A stretch of DNA of 63,802 bases, the filler included, from Octopus bimaculoides (Eukaryota): the NCBI RefSeq assembly GCF_001194135.2. It is 4 parts of 4 records of this genome, joined end to end, with 100 filler letters (N's around TTAATTAATTAA, not from the genome) between each part and the next. Parts side by side here need not be neighbours in the genome. Positions count along the whole stretch, not along the records: positions 27,515 to 46,047 come from NC_068995.1; 3 more parts are not named here. One strand, 5' to 3'. Made by a program: the position numbers and the translations under genes. The notes under the pieces are model-generated. The model was given only the letters and a program-made list of their open reading frames with translations. It was not told the origin of the DNA and made no database searches. This document shows, one piece after another, positions 3,541 through 46,424 of this stretch; positions within the stretch are counted from its first letter, which is position 1; every line of letters starts with the position of its first letter.

Positions 3541-4329
3541 AATAACATCACCGAATTCCGTATTTTCAGAATTACTTCAACCAAATTCTCGGTGATGGAG
3601 TGTGTTCATTACCATTGAGAATTCGTTTATTGTATAAGTAAAAGGAACCACAGTTTTGTTCACAAAGTCTACCAAAAGACATGTATGAACTTAGTTGGCC
3701 TAAAGAGAAAAGATGAATTTTTTAGGACATGCATGTTATGTATATGAACGTTATAGAACAAGAATAGAAATTATACTTCAAACAAAATTCCACAAAACCA
3801 AAAGTAATGCGAAAGCAGTGCTTCATCCCGGCGCCAATTTGATAAACAACATAGTACCGGGAATCACGAAGAGTTTCGTGATAATATTGAATTATTATCC
3901 AGGGAAAATTCATTTCTTTCAGGCGTCTGCTATTGATGATTAGTCTGATAACGTGGTAGTTTTATTTCTTTTCTCCTTCATTTCCATCAATATATTTCGT
4001 TTTAAGGAATGGTCTGACGTCACTGCCAATGATTACCGATGAATTTACTTAGCTGTTGTCTTGACACAGTTGAGTTTGACAGAATGAAGTCGAAACTTAT
4101 TTCACTGTTATTGTTTCTGTATGTGTTCTTTCATGCCAAAGAACCACCTGACCATGAAATACCCATGTATTGAAACGAATAAAAAAGAGAAAGAAGGTGT
4201 TGTTGACTATCTCTAAACATGTGTGTGTGTGTGAATGTGTATGTGTGTATGTATGTGCATATGCATGTATGCATGTGTGTATACTTAAATATATCTTTAC
4301 AAACGCACACACATACACACACACATCTT

Positions 4330-29480: not shown

Positions 29481-30467
29481 CCATTGAATAAACCATTCAT
29501 TAGGTTCAGCTAAAATTATCAGTGAAATGATAACAAGCACTGTAAATACTGTAAATACGGTAAATACACACANNNNNNNNNNNNNNNNNNNNNNNNNNNN
29601 NNNNNNNNNNNNNNNNNNNNNNNNNNNNNNNNNNNNNNNNNNNNNNNNNNNNNNNNNNNNNNNNNNNNNNNNNNNNNNNNNNNNNNNNNNNNNNNNNNNN
29701 NNNNNNNNNNNNNNNNNNNNNNNNNNNNNNNNNNNNNNNNNNNNNNNNNNNNNNNNNNNNNNNNNNNNNNNNNNNNNNNNNNNNNNNNNNNNNNNNNNNN
29801 NNNNNNNNNNNNNNNNNNNNNNNNNNNNNNNNNNNNNNNNNNNNNNNNNNNNNNNNNNNNNNNNNNNNNNNNNNNNNNNNNNNNNNNNNNNNNNNNNNNN
29901 NNNNNNNNNNNNNNNNNNNNNNNNNNNNNNNNNNNNNNNNNNNNNNNNNNNNNNNNNNNNNNNNNNNNNNNNNNNNNNNNNNNNNNNNNNNNNNNNNNNN
30001 NNNNNNNNNNNNNNNNNNNNNNNNNNNNNNNNNNNNNNNNNNNNNNNNNNNNNNNNNNNNNNNNNNNNNNNNNNNNNNNNNNNNNNNNNNNNNNNNNNNN
30101 NNNNNNNNNNNNNNNNNNNNNNNNNNNNNNNNNNNNNNNNNNNNNNNNNNNNNNNNNNNNNNNNNNNNNNNNNNNNNNNNNNNNNNNNNNNNNNNNNNNN
30201 NNNNNNNNNNNNNNNNNNNNNNNNNNNNNNNNNNNNNNNNNNNNNNNNNNNNNNNNNNNNNNNNNNNNNNNNNNNNNNNNNNNNNNNNNNNNNNNNNNNN
30301 NNNNNNNNNNNNNNNNNNNNNNNNNNNNNNNNNNNNNNNNNNNNNNNNNNNNNNNNNNNNNNNNNNNNNNNNNNNNNNNNNNNNNNNNNNNNNNNNNNNN
30401 NNNNNNNNNNNNNNNNNNNNNNNNNNNNNNNNNNNNNNNNNNNNNNNNNNNNNNNNNNNNNNNNNNN

Positions 30468-31170
30468 ACAATGAAAGGGCGTTCGTTACTGTATATATAT
30501 TGTATATATTCAGATTGGGTAAAAGGAAAGATATACTGAATTTATAAAGGTAACAAATGAAATTGAGATTTGTCTTTGCAAAGATTTTCAGAAATGTAAA
30601 TGATGTAACTTATTTTCATATGAAAAGAGAAATAGGCACTCAATTCTCTATGCTTAACCCCAATAAATTCAAGCGTTCAAGAGAAACGTTCATATCCCTT
30701 ATAACCCTTCAGACTGCCTTCACTTAAGCCCAAGTGAACGACTTCTTATTCAACACTTAATTGCACAACTTTCCTAGAAATACCAGCGAAATTTCCTTCT
30801 CATCATACCTTACCGTGTTAAAAGTAGTTCAGACAATGTAGCCTCTGATATATAAAAAAAAATAAATAGAAAAGGAAAACCCTGGGAGGTCATAGTCGGA
30901 ACAATGTTTTTGTCGTAGATTTGTTTGAAAAAGACTAACTTGGTGCTGAACAACATTATATCGTCAATTCAGTCTTCTCTTATTATATCATTAATACTCT
31001 GATATAATCTTGTCACAGAACATTCTTTTATATATAAATAAATCAATAGGGATAATTTATACTTTCATTTTATTGAATCTGAATTATTATTAAACGTAAT
31101 TTATTGTACTGGTTATCGATATCTGATCGACAACCGTTAAGTCGATGCATTTGTCAAATAATTCGAATAA
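30468..31170. repeat. Downstream flank of ORF-A, duplicate of 42342-43032
   Basis: Direct alignment by eye: about 98% over the first ~385 bp, about 85-90% thereafter. Left end runs into gap 29573-30467. Confidence 0.97.
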
Positions 31171-31274
31171 CTTTATCTTTGTGTATTTCATTTTTTTTTT
31201 TTTTAGCTTTAATAATATTCTTGGAAGTCTCTAGGAAACTCTTTTGAACTCAACGTTTTCGAACGATGAGCTCC

Positions 31275-33518
31275 TTATATTCTTGGAGAACCCATACCAT
31301 ACGTTGATGTTCTTCGAGAACCCGTACCACGCGTTGATGTTTTTGGAGAACCCATACCATGCACTGGGCATCCAAGATATGAAGCATCTAATGAAATTTG
31401 TGAAGTCAGTGTACCTCGGCTAGGATACCGAGGATCTCTGAGTGATTCCACTGGCCGGTGCCTTTTTTCTCCTCTTTTTATTCTTACGGGTATTCTTGAA
31501 TATCTTCTTCGAGCTTCGTTGCTACGAAAATCTGGAATTGAAATTTCTGTGTGAGTTCTAGGAGATCCTTCCAACAGATCTCGAAGTTGTTGTCTTGCCG
31601 CACTTCTGATATTTCCCATCTCACGGAGAGCTTTCACCTCTCTAGCAGCTGTCGCCCCTTTCCTAGCACGTTCATCAATATATTCTCGTACAGTATTCTC
31701 TCTTGTTTCACTCCTTGGTGGTGATTTTGTGTCTTCCCATGGTTCTTCCCATAAGTCATCCCATGGTTCATCCCATGAGTCATTCCATGCACAGCTTGGC
31801 TTTAATTGTATGTCATAAGTTATCATTGGGTCTACGTCATAAACTGACTTTAAGACTTTATTGATTCCTGCAGACCTTATCCTTCCGAGAGCTTCTCTTC
31901 GTGCCTCCTCAGGGGTTGGTAGTGCATTCCTCCAAGCTTCCTTCACAAGTTCTTTTTGGATTTCTAATTCCCTCATCCTTTTGGAAGCTTTTTTTTGTGC
32001 CGCCATTACACCCTTTATCCTTTCGAGAGCTATTCTTTGTGCCGCCGTAGGGTCTAGTCTCTTCGTAGGGCTTAGTAGCGTTTCCTTCTTAGTAGCCTCC
32101 GCACGGTACATTGCGCTTATTGCATCCCTTCTACGTTTGGCTGCTTCTAAAGCTTCCGCCCGTTTTATGTCATAAAATGTACCACGTCTTCGAAGTTGCT
32201 GTGGATCTTGTAAAGTATGCAATCTTCTTTCCATACCCATTCGTAATGGTTTTGTACATGTTCGACTAGGAAGCTCTTCAAAACTTACAGACTTCATACG
32301 ACGTCTACGAGGTATTCTTACGGGTATTCTTGAAGGCATAGCACCAAATAAGTTTTCTCTTCCAGCGGGTTTTGTTGCACGTAACACACCTCTGTGAAGT
32401 ACGCGTTTTGTTCTTATGGGTATTCTTGAAGGTACCGTATGTCTTATGGGTATTCTTGAAGGCATCGTATGTCTTTTAGGTAAGTATTCTGTTCTTAGGG
32501 GTATTCTTGAAGGCGTAGCACCGATTTTACGGAAGTGTTCTAGTCTAGCGGGCATTCTTGGAGGTACCGCACGTCTTTTAAGTAAGCGTTCTGTTCTTAG
32601 GGGTATTCTTGAAGGCGTACCCATGGGTATTAGTGAAGACGACGTCTGAAGGTGAAGGGGAAAGTTTTTTATTCTTACGGGTAGTCTTGAAGGCTTTGGG
32701 CGCTTTCTTATGGGTATTCTTGAACGTTTAAGTATCTTTTGATTTGCAGGATATGCCTGCAATTCCGAATATGTGGATGGTACAACAGTTAATGGCATGT
32801 TTTCTGCTGCATTTAGATTACCCCAAAGTTCATCCATTGTCATATAATGGACTGGATTTGGTGGTGCCGACAAACCTATTATAGGGTTACTTAATGCATC
32901 TTCTTGTTCAGTGCTTCCTTTATGTGCTCTAGGTAAGATCAAATAACTCCATCCTCCTGTTACAGATGGAATCTCTTCTGTAAATTGTTCATATGATGTC
33001 ATTGGTACTGTTGAATGCCTTTGTAAGCTATGGGATTGACGTCGAGGTATTTCATATGCAGGTTTTGGTTTATACTGTTTATACTGTCCACCACTAATTT
33101 GTGGCATTCTAATTTGGAGTGGTGTACGAGGAAGTTGGTGATGCAAATAGGATTGTAAAATTCTTGATGTTTTTTCGTCTTCCGCCAAATCTTCATAAAC
33201 TCCCGCTTGAGATTCCTCGATTATTTTAAAGTATTTTCTCTCTTCTTCTGAAACCTCTTCATCGACTTTATTGTCAGTAGCCTCAGACCAGCTGAGTTGT
33301 TTCTGTGGCTGTTCGGGGTCTTTCGAACTTCTATGAAAAGTTTTGTCAACCAATCTTGAAATCATTACTTCAATTAGAAACTCTTCAAAAATTACATTGC
33401 TTTTTTCAAATTCGCACCATCCGCTTTGATCAGAAAGAAGCTCTTCAGAAGTTGTTTCGCAATATATCTCGAAACTTTCCCAGAATTTTTTAGCATTTGA
33501 AGACTTTAAGGCAAGCAT
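31275..33518 (-). CDS. Orphan ORF-A, 747 aa, no visible introns; acidic N-terminus, basic Ser/Arg/Pro region with multiple SxIP motifs, Trp-acidic repeat
   Basis: 2.2-kb stop-free frame in AT-rich DNA; internal repeats are multiples of 3 (12, 30 bp); minus-strand AATAAA at about 31070 and 31100. Start codon uncertain; no family recognised. Confidence 0.8.
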   Translation of the reverse strand: MLALKSSNAKKFWESFEIYCETTSEELLSDQSGWCEFEKSNVIFEEFLIEVMISRLVDKTFHRSSKDPEQPQKQLSWSEATDNKVDEEVSEEERKYFKIIEESQAGVYEDLAEDEKTSRILQSYLHHQLPRTPLQIRMPQISGGQYKQYKPKPAYEIPRRQSHSLQRHSTVPMTSYEQFTEEIPSVTGGWSYLILPRAHKGSTEQEDALSNPIIGLSAPPNPVHYMTMDELWGNLNAAENMPLTVVPSTYSELQAYPANQKILKRSRIPIRKRPKPSRLPVRIKNFPLHLQTSSSLIPMGTPSRIPLRTERLLKRRAVPPRMPARLEHFRKIGATPSRIPLRTEYLPKRHTMPSRIPIRHTVPSRIPIRTKRVLHRGVLRATKPAGRENLFGAMPSRIPVRIPRRRRMKSVSFEELPSRTCTKPLRMGMERRLHTLQDPQQLRRRGTFYDIKRAEALEAAKRRRDAISAMYRAEATKKETLLSPTKRLDPTAAQRIALERIKGVMAAQKKASKRMRELEIQKELVKEAWRNALPTPEEARREALGRIRSAGINKVLKSVYDVDPMITYDIQLKPSCAWNDSWDEPWDDLWEEPWEDTKSPPRSETRENTVREYIDERARKGATAAREVKALREMGNIRSAARQQLRDLLEGSPRTHTEISIPDFRSNEARRRYSRIPVRIKRGEKRHRPVESLRDPRYPSRGTLTSQISLDASYLGCPVHGMGSPKTSTRGTGSRRTSTYGMGSPRI
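32320..32730 (-). repeat. Coding repeat array GGGTATTCTTGAAGG (= PSRIP on minus strand) in ORF-A
   Basis: About eight variably spaced copies (one degenerate); one more at about 31485. Confidence 0.9.
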
Positions 33519-33583: not shown

Positions 33584-34085
33584 TCTTTGTGAAATATCCG
33601 ATGTTTGAATCGTGCAATCCTATATAATGTAATCTTAATTTAATATTACTTGTGCTCTTCACCTTTTAACCAATTGATCTAAGCGACCTAAAATGCTCCC
33701 GTTACACACACAGGGTTACTTGCTTTCATTTACGAATCCTATTGACATTGGTTTCAAGACTTGGTACGAAACATAATTAGTTTGATATTAAATTGCTTTC
33801 ATCCTTGGAGTAACATTTATATCAATGAGTAATCACAGTTAATGTTTTATGAATGTTCACCACACATATGGCAGTTGATTTTGCATTGAGCGTTTGCAGA
33901 AGTCCTCTGAAAGCCTATTGTGAATATTTTAAGATAAAAATATATTTTAGTTTAATATGATCAAATATAAGAATGTTTTATAGTTGCCATACATCAACAA
34001 CATAACAAACAATTACTATGCGTTCGGTATTTTATACATACAGCGGTTTTATGTAACAAACATGCATACACTTACATAAACACAC
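33584..34085 (-). promoter_or_regulatory. Upstream flank and putative promoter of ORF-A, homologous to 45216-45705
   Basis: About 80% similar by eye; shared AACCAATTGAT (CCAAT core at 33670). Regulatory role is inferred. Confidence 0.55.
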
Positions 34086-34189
34086 ACGAAATACCAGCAG
34101 ACACTCACCCACCCATGCATGCACATACATGCACATACACGCACATGCGCATATAACGATCCTGCGAGCTCGTCGTCTTAATAATAATA

Positions 34190-36492
34190 TCTAATACTCA
34201 AAGTGGCTTACAGAAGGGATTACATATCTCTTACCAAAAACAGAAGAAACTACTAACCCCGCCAAAATATTGACCCATAACATGCCTCACCACCATATAT
34301 ACATTATTAACGTCTATATTGGCGATTAGAGCATATGAATTCTTGGACAACAGGAAGTTATTTCCAGTGGAATAAAAAGGATGTAAAAGGAGTTCATTTG
34401 GATGTAAGGACCAATTGTTGATTGATAAAATAGTAATTGAAAATTGTAAATCCAAACACAGAAACCTTAGCACCGCTTGGATAGATTACAAGAAGGCTTT
34501 TGACAATGTTCCCCATGCATGGATCAACAAGGCCCTGGAAATTTACAAGATAGCTCCAAAAATTGTGAACTTTTTAAAAGTAATCATGAATCCGTGGAGA
34601 ACAACCCTCATTTTAAACCATGCACCAGGATATACCACCTCACCAGGATATACCACCTCACCAGGCATCAATACCACCTGAGGTATCTTTCAAGGTGACT
34701 CATTATCACTATTACTATTCTGCCTTGCTATGTTCCCTTTATCCACGCAACTGAATAATGCCAAGAGAGGGTATAAGGTCTTTGACCAGAAAATTAATCA
34801 TCTACTCTATATGGATGATCTAAAATTGTTTACCAAAGACGACAAAGAATTAGAAGAGTTCCTGAATATTGTCATAGAATTCAGCTCTGATATATGTATG
34901 GAATTCGGACTTGATAAATGTGCAAAGGCTACTTTCAAAGGCAGAAAACATAGAACTTGATACTACCACAGCTATTGGAAACCTAGACCAATCCGAAGTA
35001 TACAAATATCAGGGAACCAATGAAGGTGATGGTATCCAGCACTCTAAAATGAGAGAGAAAATCCACAAGGGAAGCTACCGAAGGTTAAGAATGGTCCTAA
35101 ACTCAGAATTAAATGCTGCTAACAGAATTAATGCGATCAATTTTTTAACCATACCAGTAACCATATATAGTTTCAGTATCATTTAAGTGCAGTCTCACTG
35201 ACATGCAGAATATGGATGGAAAGATCCATAAATTCCTTACAAGGTACCGAATGCACCATCCAAAATCAGATGTAGACAGGATTTTTCTCCCAAGAAAAAT
35301 AGGTGAAAGAGGCCTAATACAGCTCGAACAATCCTTCAAATCAGCAATAATAGGCCTTGAAACGTAACTTAATACAGCAAGTGATGTGCTCTTACGAAAT
35401 GCACTAAAGCATGAAGATTCCAAACAAGCTTCAATCATGAAGCTTAGTCAGAAATTTAAAAAATTTCTTGGCCTACAAATTAATAAGAATGACCAAATAC
35501 ACCCAAACACTGACAGACTTATCATTGCTTCTCCTGACATAGAAATTAACAACCAGAAAGACCGAAGAGATCCAAATAGTAATAAACCTATCATTGATGC
35601 AAAAAACATCAAACAAAAAGCCAAGAAGGTTTGCATGAATAATATCGAAGACAACTTGAAAGGTAAACTCCAACATGGAAAATATCCAAACCGCCTCTAC
35701 AAGCCAGATATTGATCAAAATCTAACACACCAATGGTTACAAGGGGCAGGTCTGAGAGAGGAAATAGAAGGTTTTGTTATTGCAGGGCAAGATCAGAGCT
35801 TACCTACCTGAAACTACCATACAAACGTCCTTAAAGATGGATCTAATCCCTCCTGCAGAAAGTGGGTAAAATTCACAGAGACATTTGATCATTTTTCTGA
35901 CTGCCCAGTCCTCGCTAAAAAGGAGTACCTCATAAGACAAAACAGACCACTGGAATGCTTGTAAATACCACAAAATTAAATCCCATGATAAGTGGTACAG
36001 GCACCATCCAGAGGTTGTAGTAAATGTCGAGGGCGTCATCATCCTTTGGAACTTCCCAATACAAACGGACAGAAAAAGGGACTTCAATCGACCAGACATT
36101 GTGATCAAGGACTACAACGGAGGAACTTGTCTTAATAGATATGTCTGTCTCACAAGATCAAAATGTCTCAAGGAAGGAATACGAAAAGCTTTCTCACTAT
36201 AAAGATCTGCAAATCAAAGTCACAAAAGTATGGAAGCTTAGTACTACGATAATACCAGTAGTAATTGATAAAGAAGGGTGCTGAGAGGTATATTAAGCAA
36301 CTCCCTGGTAATTCCAATCTCTGTGAACTACAAAAGATAACCTTGATGGGCTGCACCAGCCCATATACTACGAAAAGCACCCTCCATCTAAAATTGAATA
36401 AATGTGGTGGTAATTTTAGCATGCATCCTTCTTGGCCTCCGAAGGATGCCCGGTACTAAGGCAGCTAAAATGAAGATATAATGAAATGAAAC

Positions 36493-36496
<4 letters not shown>
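34190..36496 (+). mobile_element. R4/Dong-like RLE non-LTR retrotransposon, 5'-truncated, decayed
   Basis: [36 protein letters not shown] remnant, RPDIVI; 3' UTR hairpin at 36423-36449; ends in (TAA)n. Confidence 0.88.
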
Positions 36497-36561
<65 letters not shown>

Positions 36562-36640
36562 TAACAATAATAATAACAATAACAACAACAACAACAACAA
36601 CAACAACACTAATAATAACAACAACAACAACAACAACAAC

Positions 36641-36671
<31 letters not shown>
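36497..36671. repeat. (TAA)n/(CAA)n microsatellite; similar tracts at 37286-37368, 37939-38016 and 38214-38268
   Basis: Read directly from the sequence. Confidence 0.99.
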
Positions 36672-36674
<3 letters not shown>

Positions 36675-37290: not shown

Positions 37291-37368
<78 letters not shown>

Positions 37369-37369
<1 letters not shown>

Positions 37370-37467: not shown

Positions 37468-37938
37468 NNNNNNNNNNNNNNNNNNNNNNNNNNNNNNNNN
37501 NNNNNNNNNNNNNNNNNNNNNNNNNNNNNNNNNNNNNNNNNNNNNNNNNNNNNNNNNNNNNNNNNNNNNNNNNNNNNNNNNNNNNNNNNNNNNNNNNNNN
37601 NNNNNNNNNNNNNNNNNNNNNNNNNNNNNNNNNNNNNNNNNNNNNNNNNNNNNNNNNNNNNNNNNNNNNNNNNNNNNNNNNNNNNNNNNNNNNNNNNNNN
37701 NNNNNNNNNNNNNNNNNNNNNNNNNNNNNNNNNNNNNNNNNNNNNNNNNNNNNNNNNNNNNNNNNNNNNNNNNNNNNNNNNNNNNNNNNNNNNNNNNNNN
37801 NNNNNNNNNNNNNNNNNNNNNNNNNNNNNNNNNNNNNNNNNNNNNNNNNNNNNNNNNNNNNNNNNNNNNNNNNNNNNNNNNNNNNNNNNNNNNNNNNNNN
37901 NNNNNNNNNNNNNNNNNNNNNNNNNNNNNNNNNNNNNN

Positions 37939-38017
<79 letters not shown>

Positions 38018-38033
38018 AAACAATGATAATGAT

Positions 38034-38213
38034 TTCTAACTTCGGCACAAGGCCAGCAATTTCGGGGAGAGAGTAAGTCGATTGCATCAAACCCAATACT
38101 CAACAGGTGCTTATTTCATCGAAAGGATGAAAAGCAAAGTCGACCTTGGTGATATTGGAACTCATCATATATCCGGAGGAAATGCTGTGAAGTATTTCGT
38201 CCCGGCTTTCCGC
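38034..38213 (-). mobile_element. SINE family B, degenerate
   Basis: Reverse-complement similarity to 11614-11819; (ATN)n tail at left. Confidence 0.65.
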
Positions 38214-38214
38214 C

Positions 38215-38267
<53 letters not shown>

Positions 38268-41851: not shown

Positions 41852-42165
41852 AGAGGAGGAGGAGGGACAAGGAAGAGGAAGAAGACAAGGAGGAGAACGA
41901 GGAGGACGAGGACGAGGGGAGGACGAGGAGGAGGGGAGAACGAGAAGGAAGAAGAGAAAGAGGAGGAGGAGGAGGGGAGGTCGACAAGAAGGAGGGGGAC
42001 AAGGAGGAGGAGAAAGATGAGGATAAGGAGGAGGACGAGAAGGAGGTGGACAAGAAGGAGGTGGACAAGAAGGAGGTGGACAAGAAGGAGGAGTGCCACG
42101 ATATCGATGCCGACGACGCCGACAACAAGGAGGAGGTGTTGGTGTTGGTGTTGGTGGTAGTAGAG
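41852..42165. repeat. Purine-rich (GAG/GAA) low-complexity tract
   Basis: Read directly from the sequence. Confidence 0.95.
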
Positions 42166-42341: not shown

Positions 42342-43032
42342 ACAATGAAAGGGCGTTCGTTACTGTATATATATTGTATATATTCAGATTGGGTAAAAGG
42401 AAAGATATACTGAATTTATAAGGGTAACAAATGAAATTGATATTGGTCTTTGCAAAGATTTTCAGAAATGTAAATGATGTAACTTATTTTCATATGAAAA
42501 GAGAAATAGGCACTCAATTCTCTATGCTTAACCCCAATAAATTCAAGCGTTCAAGAGAAGCGTTCATATCCCTTATAACCCTTCAGACTGCCTTCACTTA
42601 AGCCCAAGTGAACGACTTCTTATTCAACACTTAATTGCACAACTTTCCTAGAAATACCAGCGAAATTTCCTTCTCATCGTACCTTACCGTGTTAAAAATA
42701 GTTCAGACAATGTAGCCTCTGATATAAAAAAGAAGGGGGGGATCCTGGGAGGTCATAGTCGGAACGGTGTCTTCATCGTAGATTTGTTTAAAAAAGACTA
42801 ACTTGGTGCTGAACAACATTACATCGTCAATTCAATCTTCTCTCATTATATCATTAATACTCTGATATAGTCCTGTCACAGAACATGTTATATACAACTA
42901 AATCAGTAGGTGTAATTTATACTTTCATTTTATTGAATCTGAATTATTTATTGAACGTAATTTATTGTACTGGTTATCGATATCTGATCGACCACCGTTA
43001 ATTTCAATATATTTGTAAAATAATTCGAATAA
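42342..43032. repeat. Downstream flank of ORF-B, duplicate of 30468-31170
   Basis: Same alignment; includes shared polyadenylation hexamers. Confidence 0.97.
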
Positions 43033-43115: not shown

Positions 43116-45032
43116 TCAGTAGCGCCATGGTGGCCTACGTGTTAACTCTCCCAAAGTCGTTTTTTGTCTTGGAGTTACTTTTGGTCTTGATGTTGCGCGT
43201 CCTTCAGTCCTCGAAACCACCTCTTCACGTCTAGTACTTATTTGTCTTCCAGGTGCTGCACGACTTCCCATCCTCGATTCGCTCTCTCTACTTCTAGTAC
43301 TTACTTGTCTTGAAACCACCTCTTCACTTCTAGTAACTGGGCGTCTTCCTGTTCTAGAAGTGGTCTCTCCACGTCTAGTACTTACTTCTCTTGTAACCAC
43401 CTCTTCGCTTCTAGTAGTTGGGCGTCTTCCTCTTCTAGAAGTAGTCTCTCCACGTCTGGTACTTACTTCTCTTGCAACCACCTCTTCACTTCTAGTAGCT
43501 GGGCGTCTTCCTGTTCTAGAAGCGGTCCCTCCACGTCTAGTACTTACTTCTCTTGTAGCCAGCTCTACATTTCTAGTAGTTGGGCGTCTTCCTCTTCTAG
43601 AAGTGGTCTCTCCACGTCTAGTACTTACTTCTCTTGTAACCACTTCATCTCCTATCGCTTCATGCATAGCATGTGCTTCCAGAAAATCTTGTCTCATTCT
43701 GTCAAGTCTATCTTGACTTCTAGCAGATACGTAAAGAAAGCTTTCGGGTCTACTTGCAGCCCTGACTGCAGCGAGAGCTGATTCAGCTGTGGTATACATT
43801 GCAGTACTTGGATCAAAAGTAAAGGGATCATATGCCACTTCTTTTATCCTTGCTGAACGAGGAATTCCATGTACATCCCTATGTTCACCACATTTCTGGC
43901 AGAATAGGGGCTGTCGTAGGTGTCTTATACGCTCTTGTGCTTTCTGAGTTGCTTCTGCTGCTCTTTCATCTCTTGTAATCCTCAAAATACTTCTAGAAGT
44001 TATCCTTGGATAACCTGGGACATATTCTATAACGCGTGACATTTCTTCTTCGTCTGCGAACTGAGGTTCAAATATTTCCTGATCCGGATAAACCCCACCC
44101 CATGCTCCTCCTGATTCACCATCTTCGAAACGGTAAAATACATTTGCATAAGGAAAGACTGTATCGGGAGCTTCGCCTCCCGCTGCTCCCTCAATTTCAA
44201 ATAAGCTAGAAATTTCTCCAGCAGTTTCATTCCATATATCACGCAACTCTTCCTCTTCTGGGATTTCGTTAGTTGCTATTTCCTCTTCTGGGATTTCGTT
44301 AGTTACTATTTCCTCTTCTGGGATTTCGTTAGTTGCTATTTCCTCTTCTGGGATTTCGTTAGCTACTATCTCCTCTGCATCAAATCTGTCTATTATTATA
44401 GGTTCGAAACTGTCACTTTGTATTTTTGAATACAACTGGGTAGGATAGATTGCTTTATGCCTGTACAAATGCCTTCCTATCTCAGGTTGAACTTCAAGAG
44501 GCACTTGTACCACTTCTTCTTCAGGGTCTTCCGCCAATGGTGGGAGTGTGCGTGCTACCCCACCCCTTCTTCGCCTCTTTACAAAACCAAGAGCTTCCAT
44601 CTCCATCTTGCTTTTTAAATATCCAAGCGGGGCATCTATTAATTCTTTAATTGATTCTCCTCTCGATGGGATTATTTCTGTTTGCTTATCGGCTATTCGC
44701 TGCGGTATTTCATGCTCTTCTCCAAATGACCGACCTCGTTCTGGAATTACAGATTCTTCTCCGTCGTCTTCCTCTGCTGCTGCTGCTGCTGCTTCTTCTG
44801 CTTCCATTTCTTCTATCTCACTTTCTGTGAGATTTCCCATTATAATCTCTCGTAAAGTTTTTGGTCTTCCACTTGGACGAGTCTGTTCACGAGATGCATT
44901 TGGGTTTGACTCGACAGTTAAGCCTCTTTCATGTGGACTGTCACTGTCATCGTCTCCTGATCGTGGTGAAGTAACTGTTTCGGAACGCTCAGTTAACTCC
45001 ATGCCAACGCCACTTGAGGATGCACCTGCCAT
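43116..45032 (-). CDS. Orphan ORF-B, 638 aa, no visible introns; Glu-rich N half with 10-aa repeats, Arg/Ser/Thr-rich C-terminus with 27-aa repeats
   Basis: 1.9-kb stop-free frame; 30-bp and 81-bp in-frame repeats; TATATAAAAA about 40 nt upstream of the ATG; AATAAA signals at about 42930-42965. No family recognised. Confidence 0.82.
   Translation of the reverse strand: MAGASSSGVGMELTERSETVTSPRSGDDDSDSPHERGLTVESNPNASREQTRPSGRPKTLREIIMGNLTESEIEEMEAEEAAAAAAEEDDGEESVIPERGRSFGEEHEIPQRIADKQTEIIPSRGESIKELIDAPLGYLKSKMEMEALGFVKRRRRGGVARTLPPLAEDPEEEVVQVPLEVQPEIGRHLYRHKAIYPTQLYSKIQSDSFEPIIIDRFDAEEIVANEIPEEEIATNEIPEEEIVTNEIPEEEIATNEIPEEEELRDIWNETAGEISSLFEIEGAAGGEAPDTVFPYANVFYRFEDGESGGAWGGVYPDQEIFEPQFADEEEMSRVIEYVPGYPRITSRSILRITRDERAAEATQKAQERIRHLRQPLFCQKCGEHRDVHGIPRSARIKEVAYDPFTFDPSTAMYTTAESALAAVRAASRPESFLYVSARSQDRLDRMRQDFLEAHAMHEAIGDEVVTREVSTRRGETTSRRGRRPTTRNVELATREVSTRRGGTASRTGRRPATRSEEVVAREVSTRRGETTSRRGRRPTTRSEEVVTREVSTRRGETTSRTGRRPVTRSEEVVSRQVSTRSRESESRMGSRAAPGRQISTRREEVVSRTEGRATSRPKVTPRQKTTLGELTRRPPWRY
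43270..43645 (-). repeat. 81-bp coding tandem repeat, x4 plus partial copies (EVVTREVSTRRGETTSRRGRRPTTRSE) in ORF-B
   Basis: ACCACC anchors at 43315 and 43396 give an 81-bp period; 27-aa unit in translation. Confidence 0.95.
44251..44376 (-). repeat. 30-bp coding tandem repeat x4 (EEIATNEIPE) in ORF-B
   Basis: TCCTCTTCTGGGATTTCGTTAGTTGCTATT recurring every 30 bp. Confidence 0.97.
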
Positions 45033-45215: not shown

Positions 45216-45705
45216 TCTTTGTGAAATATCCGATGTTTGTATCTTGCAATCCTATATGATGTAATCTTAATTCAATATTACTTGCGCAGTTCACCTTTTA
45301 ACCAATTGATCTTAACCACCTAAAATGCTCCATTTACATACAGGATTACTTGCTTTCATTACGAATCCTATCGACATTGGCTTCAGGACTTGGTACAAAA
45401 CATTAGTTTGATATTAAATTATTTTCATCCTTGGAGTAATATTAATATCATTGAGTATGCATGATTAATATCTTTTGAATATTCACGGCAAATATTGAAG
45501 AAGGCTGTGCCGAGTGTTTGTAGAAATCCTTTCAGAGCCTACTGTGAATATTTTAAGATAAAAAATATTTTAGTTCCATGTGATCGAATACAAGAACGTT
45601 TTATAGTTTCCAGAATATCAGCGAATCGCTGTGCATTTGGTATTGCATATATACAGAAGATTTATACAACAAACACACGTATACACTTGCACACACATAA
45701 ACACA
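45216..45705 (-). promoter_or_regulatory. Upstream flank and putative promoter of ORF-B, homologous to 33584-34085
   Basis: Same alignment; CCAAT core at 45302. Regulatory role is inferred. Confidence 0.55.
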
Positions 45706-46424
45706 CACGCACACACACACATACGCATACACAAACACACACACATACACGCACACAGTATACGGCTGTCCATATACAGAGCTACACTTATAAACGTAAG
45801 CGGCCACGCACACAAACACAGCACCAGACACTTAAACAAATATACATGTACATTGGTACCAAATTATTCACACCTACACAAATATGTACAAATATGTTGG
45901 TACTCCCTCACGTACACATGCATTCGTAGATTAAATTGGATGCAAACGTGTGTATAAACACACACACATATAAATTAATAAATATATACATATATATGTA
46001 TGTATATATGTATGTATGTATAATATATATATATATATATATATATGNNNNNNNNNNNNNNNNNNNNNNNNNNNNNNNNNNNNNNNNNNNNTTAATTAAT
46101 TAANNNNNNNNNNNNNNNNNNNNNNNNNNNNNNNNNNNNNNNNNNNNATTTAAAATAAATATATTTTGGAAATGGCGATTTACGGTACAATACCTAGAAA
46201 CCTGAAAATCAGACCACATGGGTTTGTTTACATCAATTCGGCAGTTTCCATAAAAAGTGTTGGGTTAGGGAAGTGGGAAAGAACGCGAAAGAGATAGAGA
46301 GAGCACGATGTCCCTCTCTATCTCTCTCTCTCCCTTACACACATGCCAATTATCTCTTACCTTCTCGCTCTCCCTCCCTTGCACACATGCCAGTTATCTC
46401 TCACCTTCTCTCTCTCTCTCTCCC

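What the first reader, a model, noticed from the sequence alone, without database searches (positions are those of the whole stretch)
31480..32730. ORF-A carries nine SxIP/SxLP motifs: candidate multivalent EB1 plus-end tracking protein
Seen: SRIP x7 (KRSRIPIRK, TPSRIPLRTER, TPSRIPLRTEY, MPSRIPIRH, VPSRIPIRT, MPSRIPVRI, YSRIPVRIK), plus SRLP and SLIP, in an Arg/Ser/Pro-rich, acid-poor context. The array appears to have expanded by duplication of a ~15-bp core. Established: SxIP in basic disordered regions binds the EBH domain of EB proteins. Inference: an orphan gene gained microtubule plus-end avidity by motif amplification.
Basis: partly seen in the sequence, partly recalled or inferred. Interest (0 to 1): 0.8.

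Follow-up and report, generated by a model that had tools for sequence, protein, structure and literature searches.

The report
Octopus-only protein with conserved SxIP array
A fast-evolving gene found only in octopuses encodes a largely disordered protein with eight tandem copies of a short motif that normally docks proteins onto growing microtubule ends; natural selection has preserved the motif, but binding has not been shown.

Summary
ORF-A (window 31275..33518, minus strand, 747 aa, single exon) has nine S-x-[IL]-P motifs, seven of them SRIP. Shuffles give a mean of 0.77 and a maximum of 6.

Eight motifs lie in aa 256-410, a structure-less stretch with net charge +38. Eight of nine pass the published nine-residue EB-binding context rule.

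The repeat unit is 17-18 aa (51-54 nt, one 30-nt variant), not about 15 bp. Units share a 21-nt core.

An exhaustive profile search found only two relatives, both octopod: Octopus vulgaris CAI9734161.1 and one unnamed assembly.

The gene is real. All coding indels against O. vulgaris keep the frame, while flank indels do not. Most of the protein evolves at dN/dS of about 1 or more. The SxIP codons themselves are constrained (dN 0.06-0.08 against dS 0.46-0.51; linkers dN 0.38-0.50 against dS 0.43-0.44). So the motif is selected as a peptide.

EB binding is the best available reading: the consensus SRIP-hydrophobic-Arg matches published preferences, and SLAIN2 is the closest analogue. It remains an inference. 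Expression, binding and tip tracking were not tested, and motif-perfect proteins are known to fail.

Verdict: a plausible new candidate, of moderate interest.

The parts
31275..33518 (-). ORF-A coding sequence, 747 aa plus TAA stop. It is a single exon and the start (MLALKSS...) is shared by all three orthologues.
   Evidence: The O. vulgaris orthologue is also called as one exon (L001 10001-13018).
33099..33518 (-). N-terminal acidic region, aa 1-140. This is the best conserved part of the protein: 91% aa identity to O. vulgaris and dN/dS 0.46-0.65. Helices are predicted but with low confidence.
32289..32753 (-). Basic array of 17-18-aa units, aa 256-410, net charge +38. It holds eight S-x-[IL]-P motifs. 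The unit consensus is [RK]RHT[TM][PS]-S-R-I-P-[VLI]-R-[TI]-[EK]-x-L-[PL]. No secondary structure is predicted.
32712..32723 (-). SRIP, aa 266 (KRSRIPIRK); passes the nine-residue rule. It lies in an 11-aa stretch that is absent from O. vulgaris.
32679..32690 (-). SRLP, aa 277 (KPSRLPVRI); passes the rule. The motif is conserved in all three species, as SRLP in O. vulgaris and SRIP in the third species.
32625..32636 (-). SLIP, aa 295 (SSSLIPMGT); fails the rule because no basic residue is nearby. Both orthologues have SRIP here, so this copy has decayed.
32601..32612 (-). SRIP, aa 303 (TPSRIPLRT); passes the rule and is conserved.
32499..32510 (-). SRIP, aa 337 (TPSRIPLRT); passes the rule and is conserved.
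32448..32459 (-). SRIP, aa 354 (MPSRIPIRH); passes the rule. O. vulgaris has SSVP and the third species SQIP at this position.
32418..32429 (-). SRIP, aa 364 (VPSRIPIRT); passes the rule and is conserved.
32322..32333 (-). SRIP, aa 396 (MPSRIPVRI); passes the rule and is conserved. It is followed by the invariant PRRRR.
31839..32186 (-). Predicted long helices at aa 445-479 and 492-560 (pLDDT 70-90), a possible coiled coil or dimerisation region. This stretch evolves fast, at about 71% nucleotide identity to O. vulgaris.
31728..31784 (-). Tryptophan-acidic stretch WNDSWDEPWDDLWEEPWED (aa 579-597), produced by a 12-nt tandem repeat. It is absent from both orthologues.
31569..31712 (-). Predicted helix, aa 603-650 (pLDDT about 75).
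31488..31499 (-). Distal SRIP, aa 674 (RYSRIPVRI); passes the rule but is absent from the orthologues. Its 21-nt core TCAAGAATACCCGTAAGAATA is identical to the core of the array unit at aa 396. With four more bases (25 nt in all) it matches the aa 277 unit except for one base.
31280..31360 (-). 30-nt tandem repeat (2.7 copies) encoding GMGSPKTSTRGTGSRRTSTYGMGSPRI at the C-terminus.
31209..31277 (-). TAA stop at 31275-31277, where O. vulgaris has CAA (Gln). It is followed by 21 in-frame codons (31212-31274) that still read GAHRSKTLSSKEFPRDFQEYY, the conserved C-terminus of the O. vulgaris protein. The ancestral TAA is at 31209-31211.
33584..34145 (-). 5' flanking block with a CTATAAAAC element at 33975-33983. 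It is 91-98% identical to O. vulgaris. It is also present upstream of neighbouring ORF-B (45216-45755, 78.5%) and upstream of O. vulgaris gene C. It is probably a shared promoter and 5'UTR.
30468..31170 (-). 3' flanking block containing AATAAA. It is 92.5% identical to the block downstream of ORF-B (42342-43032). It is cut by the N gap at 30467. It is probably a shared 3'UTR.

Best explanation
ORF-A is a real protein-coding gene. It is intronless in its coding part, found only in octopods, and evolves fast.

The protein has four regions:
- an acidic, moderately conserved N-terminus;
- a strongly basic, structure-less central array of 17-18-aa units;
- helical, possibly coiled-coil segments;
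- a variable, repeat-prone C-terminus.

Each array unit is centred on S-R-I-P followed by a hydrophobic residue and an arginine. The most likely mechanism is that each unit is a microtubule tip localisation signal. [quoted passage not shown] The following hydrophobic and basic residues engage the EBH C-terminal tail and its acidic surface. Eight such sites on one flexible chain would give avidity for the dense EB population on growing microtubule ends, or for EB condensates.

Shown here: the gene is maintained, the motif is there, its context fits the published rule, and the tetrapeptide is selectively preserved.

Inferred: that EB is the partner, and that the protein tracks plus ends.
For: The gene is real:
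- The frame is open in three species at 747, 1005 and 1004 aa.
- Against O. vulgaris, 23 of 25 coding indels are multiples of three. The other two (56 and 10 nt) sum to 66. In the flanks only 6 of 20 indels are multiples of three.
- The loci are collinear.

The motif is non-random:
- Nine are observed against a shuffle mean of 0.77.

The motif is selected as a peptide:
- Against the more distant species, SxIP codons show dN 0.06-0.08 with dS 0.46-0.51. Linker codons show dN 0.38-0.50 with dS 0.43-0.44.
- Window versus third species: core codons are 17 identical, 8 synonymous and 3 non-synonymous. Linker codons are 45, 12 and 72. Fisher p = 1.4e-5.
- Synonymous variants occur in the core (TCA/TCG, AGA/CGA, CCC/CCT). 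The constraint is therefore on the amino acids, not on the DNA.

The context fits EBH ligands:
- 8/9 motifs (window), 5/6 (O. vulgaris) and 8/12 (third species) pass the rule 'X1-X2-[ST]-X3-[IL]-P-X4-X5-X6, one K/R in X1-X4, no D/E in X1-X6' quoted in PMC3649978.
- Across 26 units the x position is R in 20. The first residue after P is V, L or I in 21. The second is R in 21.
- This matches the reported preference for R/K at x and R/V after P (PMC3967968).
- It also matches the affinity gain from hydrophobic then basic post-SxIP residues (PMC12695022).

The region is disordered:
- pLDDT is below 50 with no secondary structure across aa 121-449.

There is precedent for tandem EB sites on an unstructured basic region:
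- SLAIN2 has four SxIP-like motifs plus RSLP (PMC3115796).
- Tandem SxIP regions were reported to make tip localisation more robust (Honnappa 2009, as cited in PMC3967968).
Against: - No binding, localisation or expression data exist. The O. vulgaris orthologue is only a 'hypothetical predicted protein'.
- Matching the motif rule is not sufficient. Three Theileria proteins with matching motifs and basic nuclear signals failed to follow EB1 and were detected in the nucleus (PMC3649978). ORF-A also has basic clusters (KRSR, KRPK, RRRR, KRRR).
- Four or seven tandem SxIP aptamers nearly abolished a two-hybrid interaction with EB1.
- An EB dimer binds only two motifs at a time.
- The invariant part of the unit is wider than SxIP: R at x and R two residues after P. 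EBH binding does not require R at x, since that side chain is solvent-exposed in the MACF complex. A different reader of the motif is therefore possible.
- Serine is scarce in the array (7%), unlike typical basic/Ser-rich +TIP regions.
- Some units have decayed in the window and O. vulgaris lineage (PPRMPAR, TKPAGRE, SLIP).
- Most of the protein evolves at dN/dS of 1 or more.
- The repeats are not independent data points, because units within a species share ancestry or are homogenised.
Confidence: 0.45

Rival explanations
1. The array is a functional repeat with a different job. The selected unit is the whole basic peptide ([PS]SRIP-hydrophobic-R), not SxIP as such. It might bind the acidic tubulin tails or the microtubule lattice directly, as classical MAP repeats do. 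It might bind nucleic acid in the nucleus or nucleolus. Or it might bind an unknown cephalopod partner.
For: - Conservation extends beyond S, I and P. R at x is present in 20 of 26 units and R at the second position after P in 21 of 26. L at +9 is common.
- The region has net charge +38 and several basic clusters that resemble nuclear signals.
- Motif-perfect basic proteins have been seen to go nuclear instead of tip tracking.
- There is no sequence homology to any known +TIP or MAP.
Against: - Purely electrostatic binding would not need invariant Ser, Ile and Pro. Yet those are the positions with the lowest dN.
- The extended consensus is what published work describes as favourable for EBH ligands.
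- No other motif class that I could recall fits the unit. I checked, from memory, the PP1 RVxF, calcineurin PxIxIT, SH3 PxxP and 14-3-3 patterns by eye and none matched.
Confidence: 0.33
2. The array is a by-product of a repeat-prone gene. Slippage and unequal exchange create and homogenise units, and the apparent conservation of SRIP reflects concerted evolution rather than function.
For: - The gene makes new coding repeats easily. Examples are a 12-nt repeat giving WDEPWDDLWEEPWED only in this species, a 30-nt repeat at the C-terminus, and roughly 43-aa repeats only in O. vulgaris.
- The core uses the same codons in nearly every unit, including CCC. CCC is rare elsewhere in the gene, at 4 of 53 Pro codons.
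- Copy number varies between species.
- dN/dS is about 1 or more over most of the protein.
Against: - Homogenisation should preserve linkers and cores alike. Here linkers diverge at the synonymous rate while core amino acids do not. Core synonymous sites diverge as fast as linker synonymous sites (dS 0.46-0.51 against 0.43-0.44).
- The array has persisted at the same position since the common ancestor of the three species.
Confidence: 0.14
3. ORF-A is not a protein-coding gene. It is a chance open frame or a dead gene.
For: - dN/dS is near or above 1 over most of its length.
- There is a TAA where O. vulgaris has CAA, 21 codons before the ancestral stop.
- No Pfam domain was found.
- No expression evidence was obtained.
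Against: - An open frame of 2.2-3.0 kb is kept in three species in AT-rich DNA.
- Every coding indel preserves the frame, while the flanks carry frame-breaking lengths.
- The N-terminal 140 codons and the SxIP cores show dN below dS.
- The stop removes only the last 21 residues.
Confidence: 0.03

Closest known systems
SLAIN2 / SLAIN1 (vertebrate EB-dependent plus-end trackers; PMC3115796)
   Same: - Both are largely unstructured proteins with a basic region carrying several tandem EB-type motifs. SLAIN2 has four SxIP-like motifs plus RSLP, and at least two separate fragments bind EB1.
- Both have a helical or coiled-coil segment elsewhere in the protein.
- The O. vulgaris orthologue also ends in an aromatic acidic tail (-FQEYY), reminiscent of the C-terminal tyrosine that SLAIN2 uses to bind CAP-Gly domains.
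   Different: - There is no detectable sequence homology: no Pfam hit and no hit in an exhaustive HMMER search.
- ORF-A has eight to ten near-identical 17-18-aa units, not a few scattered, dissimilar motifs.
- Its helical regions lie C-terminal to the array.
- The -QEYY tail is cut off by a stop in the window and is absent in the third species.
- ORF-A is restricted to octopods.
- No binding data exist for ORF-A.
The general class of SxIP-motif +TIPs (CLASP, APC, MACF, MCAK, STIM1, CDK5RAP2, Kar9 and others)
   Same: - ORF-A has [ST]-x-[IL]-P in a basic, disordered, acid-poor context that satisfies the nine-residue rule.
- Its SR[IL]P core and post-motif pattern of hydrophobic plus basic residues are like the high-affinity CDK5RAP2 peptide KKSRLPRILIKRSR (21 nM; PMC12695022).
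   Different: - Known members typically carry only a few motifs, and these are not tandem copies of one unit (from my own knowledge).
- Class membership is defined by EB binding and tip tracking, which have not been tested for ORF-A.
- The ORF-A array is Arg/Pro-rich rather than Ser-rich.
Engineered tandem SxIP aptamers (PMC3967968)
   Same: These are arrays of up to seven SRIP-containing peptides on one chain, and their x = R preference matches ORF-A.
   Different: - They are artificial, with 4-residue spacers.
- Only the two-copy 'Perfect' aptamer construct increased the two-hybrid signal with EB1. Every other repeat construct reduced it, and four or seven copies nearly abolished it.
- More copies therefore does not automatically mean more binding.

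Membership tests
SxIP-motif EB-dependent plus-end tracking proteins | Presence of [ST]-x-[IL]-P | tested here: met
   Nine copies are present against a shuffle mean of 0.77 and a maximum of 6.
SxIP-motif EB-dependent plus-end tracking proteins | Nine-residue context: at least one K/R among X1-X4 and no D/E among X1-X6 (Jiang et al. 2012, as quoted in PMC3649978) | tested here: met
   8 of 9 motifs pass in the window, 5 of 6 in O. vulgaris and 8 of 12 in the third species.
SxIP-motif EB-dependent plus-end tracking proteins | Motif embedded in an intrinsically disordered region rich in basic residues, Ser and Pro | tested here: met
   AlphaFold2 gives pLDDT below 50 and no secondary structure for aa 121-449. 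The array has 27% K+R, 15% P and net charge +38, but only 7% S. The model rests on only three sequences.
SxIP-motif EB-dependent plus-end tracking proteins | Motif conserved in orthologues | tested here: met
   Several motif positions keep S-x-[IL]-P in all three species. Seven motif positions align between each pair of species. Their core dN is 0.06-0.08 against linker dN of 0.38-0.50, at equal dS. Only three species were available.
SxIP-motif EB-dependent plus-end tracking proteins | Direct binding to the EBH domain of an EB protein, lost on IP-to-NN mutation | not testable with these tools
   The structure tool takes one chain from this window or its homologues only. No complex prediction or assay was possible.
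SxIP-motif EB-dependent plus-end tracking proteins | EB-dependent accumulation at growing microtubule ends in cells | not testable with these tools
   This needs live-cell imaging.
SxIP-motif EB-dependent plus-end tracking proteins | The protein is actually made | tested here: inconclusive
   Frame maintenance across three species argues for translation. No transcript or peptide evidence was available. The third-species contig includes sequence upstream of the TATA-like element, so it looks genomic.
SLAIN family | Sequence homology to SLAIN proteins (Pfam SLAIN family) | tested here: not met
   There was no Pfam hit at E <= 1 apart from a sub-threshold HAAS match. The exhaustive profile search found no SLAIN relative.
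Classical MAP repeat proteins (tau/MAP2/MAP4) | Tubulin-binding repeat recognisable by profile | tested here: not met
   There was no Pfam hit and no PDB sequence relative.

The most novel reading that the evidence does not exclude
Octopods carry a lineage-specific tandem cluster of intronless genes that reuse one promoter/5'UTR block and one 3'UTR block around coding sequences that are now unalignable. Within this cluster, ORF-A has become an unusually high-valency EB-binding scaffold, with eight to ten near-identical SxIP units. It would concentrate at, or cross-link, EB-decorated microtubule ends or EB condensates in a specialised cell type.
Probability: 0.15. Interest if true: 0.7.

Novelty: new member of a known kind. 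Interest (0 to 1): 0.45.

Why it matters
If the array binds EB proteins, ORF-A would be a young, lineage-restricted gene that joined the ancient microtubule plus-end network simply by amplifying a short linear motif. That would give a clean natural example of function arising through motif multiplication.

It would also be a natural test of how valency affects EB-dependent tip tracking. The three species carry different copy numbers, and engineered arrays have given contradictory results.

The selection contrast between the four motif residues and their linkers makes the hypothesis directly testable with a few peptides and one fusion construct.

If it does not bind EB, the result still matters. 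It would flag a conserved peptide repeat of unknown partner in a fast-evolving octopod gene cluster.

Tried and rejected
**Searches that found nothing useful**
- Pfam scans of the whole protein and of the N-terminal 255 aa gave nothing usable.
- A PDB sequence search with the three-protein profile gave only chance thermosome matches, E 0.1-0.8.
- The exhaustive profile search gave four extra hits (P0004-P0007). All match only the repeat region. They are a translated satellite-like repeat, a Monosiga reverse-transcriptase protein, a likely bacterial surface protein and a short metagenome protein with PSKVPVRTEG repeats. I rejected them as homologues.

**Structure**
- The AlphaFold2 model has mean pLDDT 42.9. 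A fold search would be meaningless and was not run.

**Ideas tested and dropped**
- Is the core conserved at the DNA or RNA level rather than as protein? The codons are nearly identical. I rejected this because core synonymous divergence equals linker synonymous divergence between species.
- Is the -QEYY tail a CAP-Gly ligand? I kept this only as a lead. It lies behind a stop codon in the window and is lost in the third species.
- Is ORF-B or O. vulgaris gene C a protein-level paralogue of ORF-A? No significant similarity was found.
- Is there an orthologue of gene C in the window piece, or of ORF-B in the O. vulgaris locus fetched? Neither was found.
- Is the + strand at 34.9-35.8 kb a retroelement fragment, as I recalled from similar sequences? 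Pfam gave no hit, so this is unconfirmed.
Full report
**1. What is in the sequence**

The finding lies in one long open frame on the minus strand, window 31275..33518. It is 747 codons long and is the longest frame in the piece.

- SRIP at aa 266, 303, 337, 354, 364, 396 and 674
- SRLP at aa 277
- SLIP at aa 295

In 20,000 shuffles of the protein, S-x-[IL]-P occurs 0.77 times on average and never more than six times. SRIP occurs 0.04 times on average.

Eight of the nine motifs sit in aa 256-410. That stretch has 31 Arg, 23 Pro, 11 Lys and 11 Ser, with only four Glu and no Asp. Its net charge is +38 over 155 residues.

One descriptive point is wrong. The array is not built from a ~15-bp unit.
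- Tandem Repeats Finder gives periods of 51 nt and 30 nt.
- The peptide unit across the three species is 17-18 residues, with consensus [RK]RHT[TM][PS]-SRIP-[VLI]-R-[TI]-[EK]-x-L-[PL].
- What repeats almost exactly is a 21-nt core, TCAAGAATACCCnTAAGAAyA, embedded in those units.

**2. Whose gene it is**

The word-indexed search of 5.8 billion proteins found only two relatives. The exhaustive HMMER profile search of 1.84 billion cluster representatives found the same two.
- An Octopus vulgaris 'hypothetical predicted protein': CAI9734161.1, 1005 aa, 54% identity.
- A 1004-aa protein from an unnamed sequencing-run assembly (SRR11869384).

Four further weak hits touch only the repeat region and come from unrelated sources. 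I do not count them as homologues.

The window and the O. vulgaris locus are collinear. Ungapped intergenic identity is 0.91-0.93. The window therefore comes from an octopus fairly close to O. vulgaris, and the third species is more distant (dS about 0.45-0.5).

There is no Pfam family and no solved relative.

**3. Is it a real gene?**

Yes, as far as sequence can tell.
- The O. vulgaris copy is called as a single exon, and all three proteins start at the same MLALKSS.
- In a nucleotide alignment of the whole locus, the coding part has 25 indels against O. vulgaris. Twenty-three are multiples of three. The other two (56 and 10 nt, in a poorly alignable patch) add up to 66. In the flanks only 6 of 20 indels are multiples of three.
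- That pattern means frameshifts have been removed by selection.

The protein nevertheless changes very fast. dN/dS is 0.46-0.65 for aa 1-140 and about 1 or more for most of the rest. Parts of the coding body are only about 70% identical in nucleotides, where neighbouring non-coding DNA is above 90%.

The gene also makes new coding repeats easily.
- A 12-nt repeat gives WNDSWDEPWDDLWEEPWED only in this species.
- A 30-nt repeat forms the C-terminus here.
- O. vulgaris owes its extra length to roughly 43-aa C-terminal repeats.

**4. Is the motif itself selected?**

This is the key test, and the answer is yes. Within the array I separated the four SxIP codons from all other codons.

| Comparison | Codon class | dN | dS |
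|---|---|---|---|
| Window or O. vulgaris vs third species | SxIP core | 0.06-0.08 | 0.46-0.51 |
| Window or O. vulgaris vs third species | Linkers | 0.38-0.50 | 0.43-0.44 |

For window against the third species, the 28 core codons are 17 identical, 8 synonymous and 3 non-synonymous. The 129 linker codons are 45, 12 and 72. Fisher p = 1.4e-5.

The near-identical core codons within a species had made me suspect a nucleotide-level constraint. One example is CCC, which is otherwise rare in this gene. That idea fails, because core synonymous sites diverge between species as fast as linker synonymous sites. The uniformity within a species is better explained by common ancestry or homogenisation of units.

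One caveat remains. Repeats are not independent observations, and only three species are available.

**5. How well does it fit an EB ligand?**

The rule attributed to Jiang et al. 2012 is quoted in PMC3649978. In X1-X2-[ST]-X3-[IL]-P-X4-X5-X6, at least one of X1-X4 must be K or R, and none of X1-X6 may be D or E.
- Eight of nine window motifs pass. SLIP fails, and both orthologues have SRIP at that position.
- Five of six pass in O. vulgaris and eight of twelve in the third species.

Beyond the rule, the unit has R at x (20 of 26), V, L or I right after Pro (21 of 26), and R next (21 of 26). Published work supports each of these.
- R/K at x and R/V after Pro are preferred by Drosophila EB1 (PMC3967968).
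- Hydrophobic and then basic post-SxIP residues raise affinity up to 100-fold. The natural CDK5RAP2 peptide KKSRLPRILIKRSR binds at 21 nM (PMC12695022).

The AlphaFold2 model (three-sequence alignment, mean pLDDT 42.9) predicts no structure for aa 121-449. It predicts confident helices at 445-479, 492-560 and 603-650. This agrees with a disordered motif-bearing region next to a possible dimerisation region.

**6. Reasons for caution**
- Nothing here shows binding, localisation or even expression.
- Proteins with textbook motifs plus basic nuclear signals failed to follow EB1 and went to the nucleus (PMC3649978). ORF-A has several basic clusters.
- Four or seven tandem SRIP aptamers nearly abolished a two-hybrid signal with EB1 (PMC3967968).
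- An EB dimer holds only two motifs at once (PMC3115796).
- The conserved R at x is not needed for EBH contact, because that side chain is solvent-exposed.
- Ser is scarce in the array.
- Some units have decayed in the window and O. vulgaris lineage (PPRMPAR, TKPAGRE).

**7. Verdict on mechanism**

I commit to the EB-ligand reading as the single most likely mechanism, at about 0.45. The array would be a multivalent microtubule tip localisation signal on a flexible chain.

The main rival, at about 0.33, is that the selected unit is the wider basic peptide with another partner. Candidates are the tubulin tails or microtubule lattice, nucleic acid, or an unknown reader.

A non-functional by-product of repeat turnover (about 0.14) is disfavoured by the core-versus-linker contrast. 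A non-gene (about 0.03) is disfavoured by frame maintenance.

**8. Comparison with what is known**

Functionally the closest case is SLAIN2. It is a largely unstructured protein with four SxIP-like motifs plus RSLP in a basic region, a coiled coil, and a C-terminal tyrosine for CAP-Gly domains.

There is no sequence relationship. ORF-A differs in having eight to ten copies of one unit.

It would be a new member of the functionally defined class of SxIP +TIPs. However, the two defining features of that class, EBH binding and EB-dependent tip tracking, could not be tested here.

**9. Surroundings**

ORF-A and the next long frame upstream, ORF-B (43116..45032, minus strand, 638 aa), are bracketed by homologous blocks.
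- About 560 nt on the 5' side (33584-34145 against 45216-45755, 78.5% identity). This block contains a CTATAAAAC element.
- At least 700 nt on the 3' side (30468-31170 against 42342-43032, 92.5% identity). This block contains AATAAA.

Their coding sequences cannot be aligned. A third gene, downstream of ORF-A in O. vulgaris, carries the same 5' block. ORF-B has the same three-species distribution as ORF-A.

The 5' block of ORF-A is 91-98% identical to O. vulgaris, somewhat above the intergenic level. This looks like a tandem family that keeps its regulatory and untranslated parts while its coding parts diverge beyond recognition. I did not pursue it further.

**10. The end of the gene**

The window has TAA at 31275-31277 where O. 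vulgaris has CAA. The next 21 codons still spell the conserved tail GAHRSKTLSSKEFPRDFQEYY before the ancestral TAA.

The third species has its own TAA directly after FPSDF.

The aromatic acidic tail, tempting as a CAP-Gly ligand, is therefore not maintained. It cannot be used as support for the +TIP reading.

Noticed in passing
window 31209-31277 (minus strand): There is a TAA stop where O. vulgaris has CAA. The 21 in-frame codons behind it still encode the conserved C-terminal tail ...KEFPRDFQEYY. This may be a recent nonsense change, a polymorphism or an assembly error. The third species (L002 about 3760-3785) has an independent TAA just before the QEYY-equivalent codons.
   Followed up: partly
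window 33584-34145 and 45216-45755; 30468-31170 and 42342-43032; L001 17027-17350: ORF-A and ORF-B are bracketed by homologous 5' blocks (78.5% identity, with a CTATAAAAC element) and 3' blocks (92.5% identity, with AATAAA). Their coding sequences are unalignable. An O. vulgaris neighbour gene has the same 5' block. This suggests a tandem gene family that shares regulatory and UTR cassettes.
   Followed up: partly
window 43116-45032 (minus strand): ORF-B is 638 aa, with an acidic N-terminal half containing 10-aa repeats (30 nt x 4.2) and a basic C-terminal half containing 27-aa repeats TREVSTRRGETTSRRGRRPTTRSEEVV (81 nt x 4.5). It has no Pfam family. Its only relatives are in O. vulgaris (60% identity) and one unnamed assembly (49%).
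   Followed up: partly
window 31728-31789 (minus strand): A 12-nt tandem repeat produces a tryptophan-acidic run (WNDSWDEPWDDLWEEPWED) that neither orthologue has. It resembles tryptophan-acidic motifs bound by kinesin light chain; that resemblance is from memory only. It is probably a recent neutral expansion.
   Followed up: no
window 31488-31512 (minus strand): The distal SRIP motif (aa 674) is absent from the orthologues. Its 21-nt core is identical to the core of the array unit at aa 396. With four more bases (25 nt in all) it matches the aa 277 unit except for one base. That suggests a small ectopic copy or conversion event rather than independent origin.
   Followed up: partly
L001 12100-12900 (O. 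vulgaris orthologue): The O. vulgaris protein is 258 aa longer, mainly through several copies of a roughly 43-aa unit (RTYPRVSIPDLN...REAANRQLQDLMEMRSRS). That unit occurs once in the window.
   Followed up: no
window 31800-32250 vs L001 11350-11780: This nearly gap-free coding stretch is only 70-72% identical between the two species, while nearby non-coding DNA is 91-93% identical. Both dN (0.37) and dS (0.22) are raised. Positive selection alone does not explain the raised dS. Conversion from a diverged copy or a local mutational process is possible.
   Followed up: no
window 34900-35800 (plus strand): Short frames here resemble, from memory, the tail of LINE-type reverse transcriptases. Pfam gave no hit, so this is unconfirmed. 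The stretch is shared with O. vulgaris.
   Followed up: partly
window 29573-30467 and 37468-37938: There are assembly gaps (runs of N) inside the piece. The first cuts the shared 3' block of ORF-A. Long (TAA)n, (ATG)n and (GAG)n microsatellites lie at 36496-36672, 37291-37369, 37939-38267 and 41853-42093.
   Followed up: no
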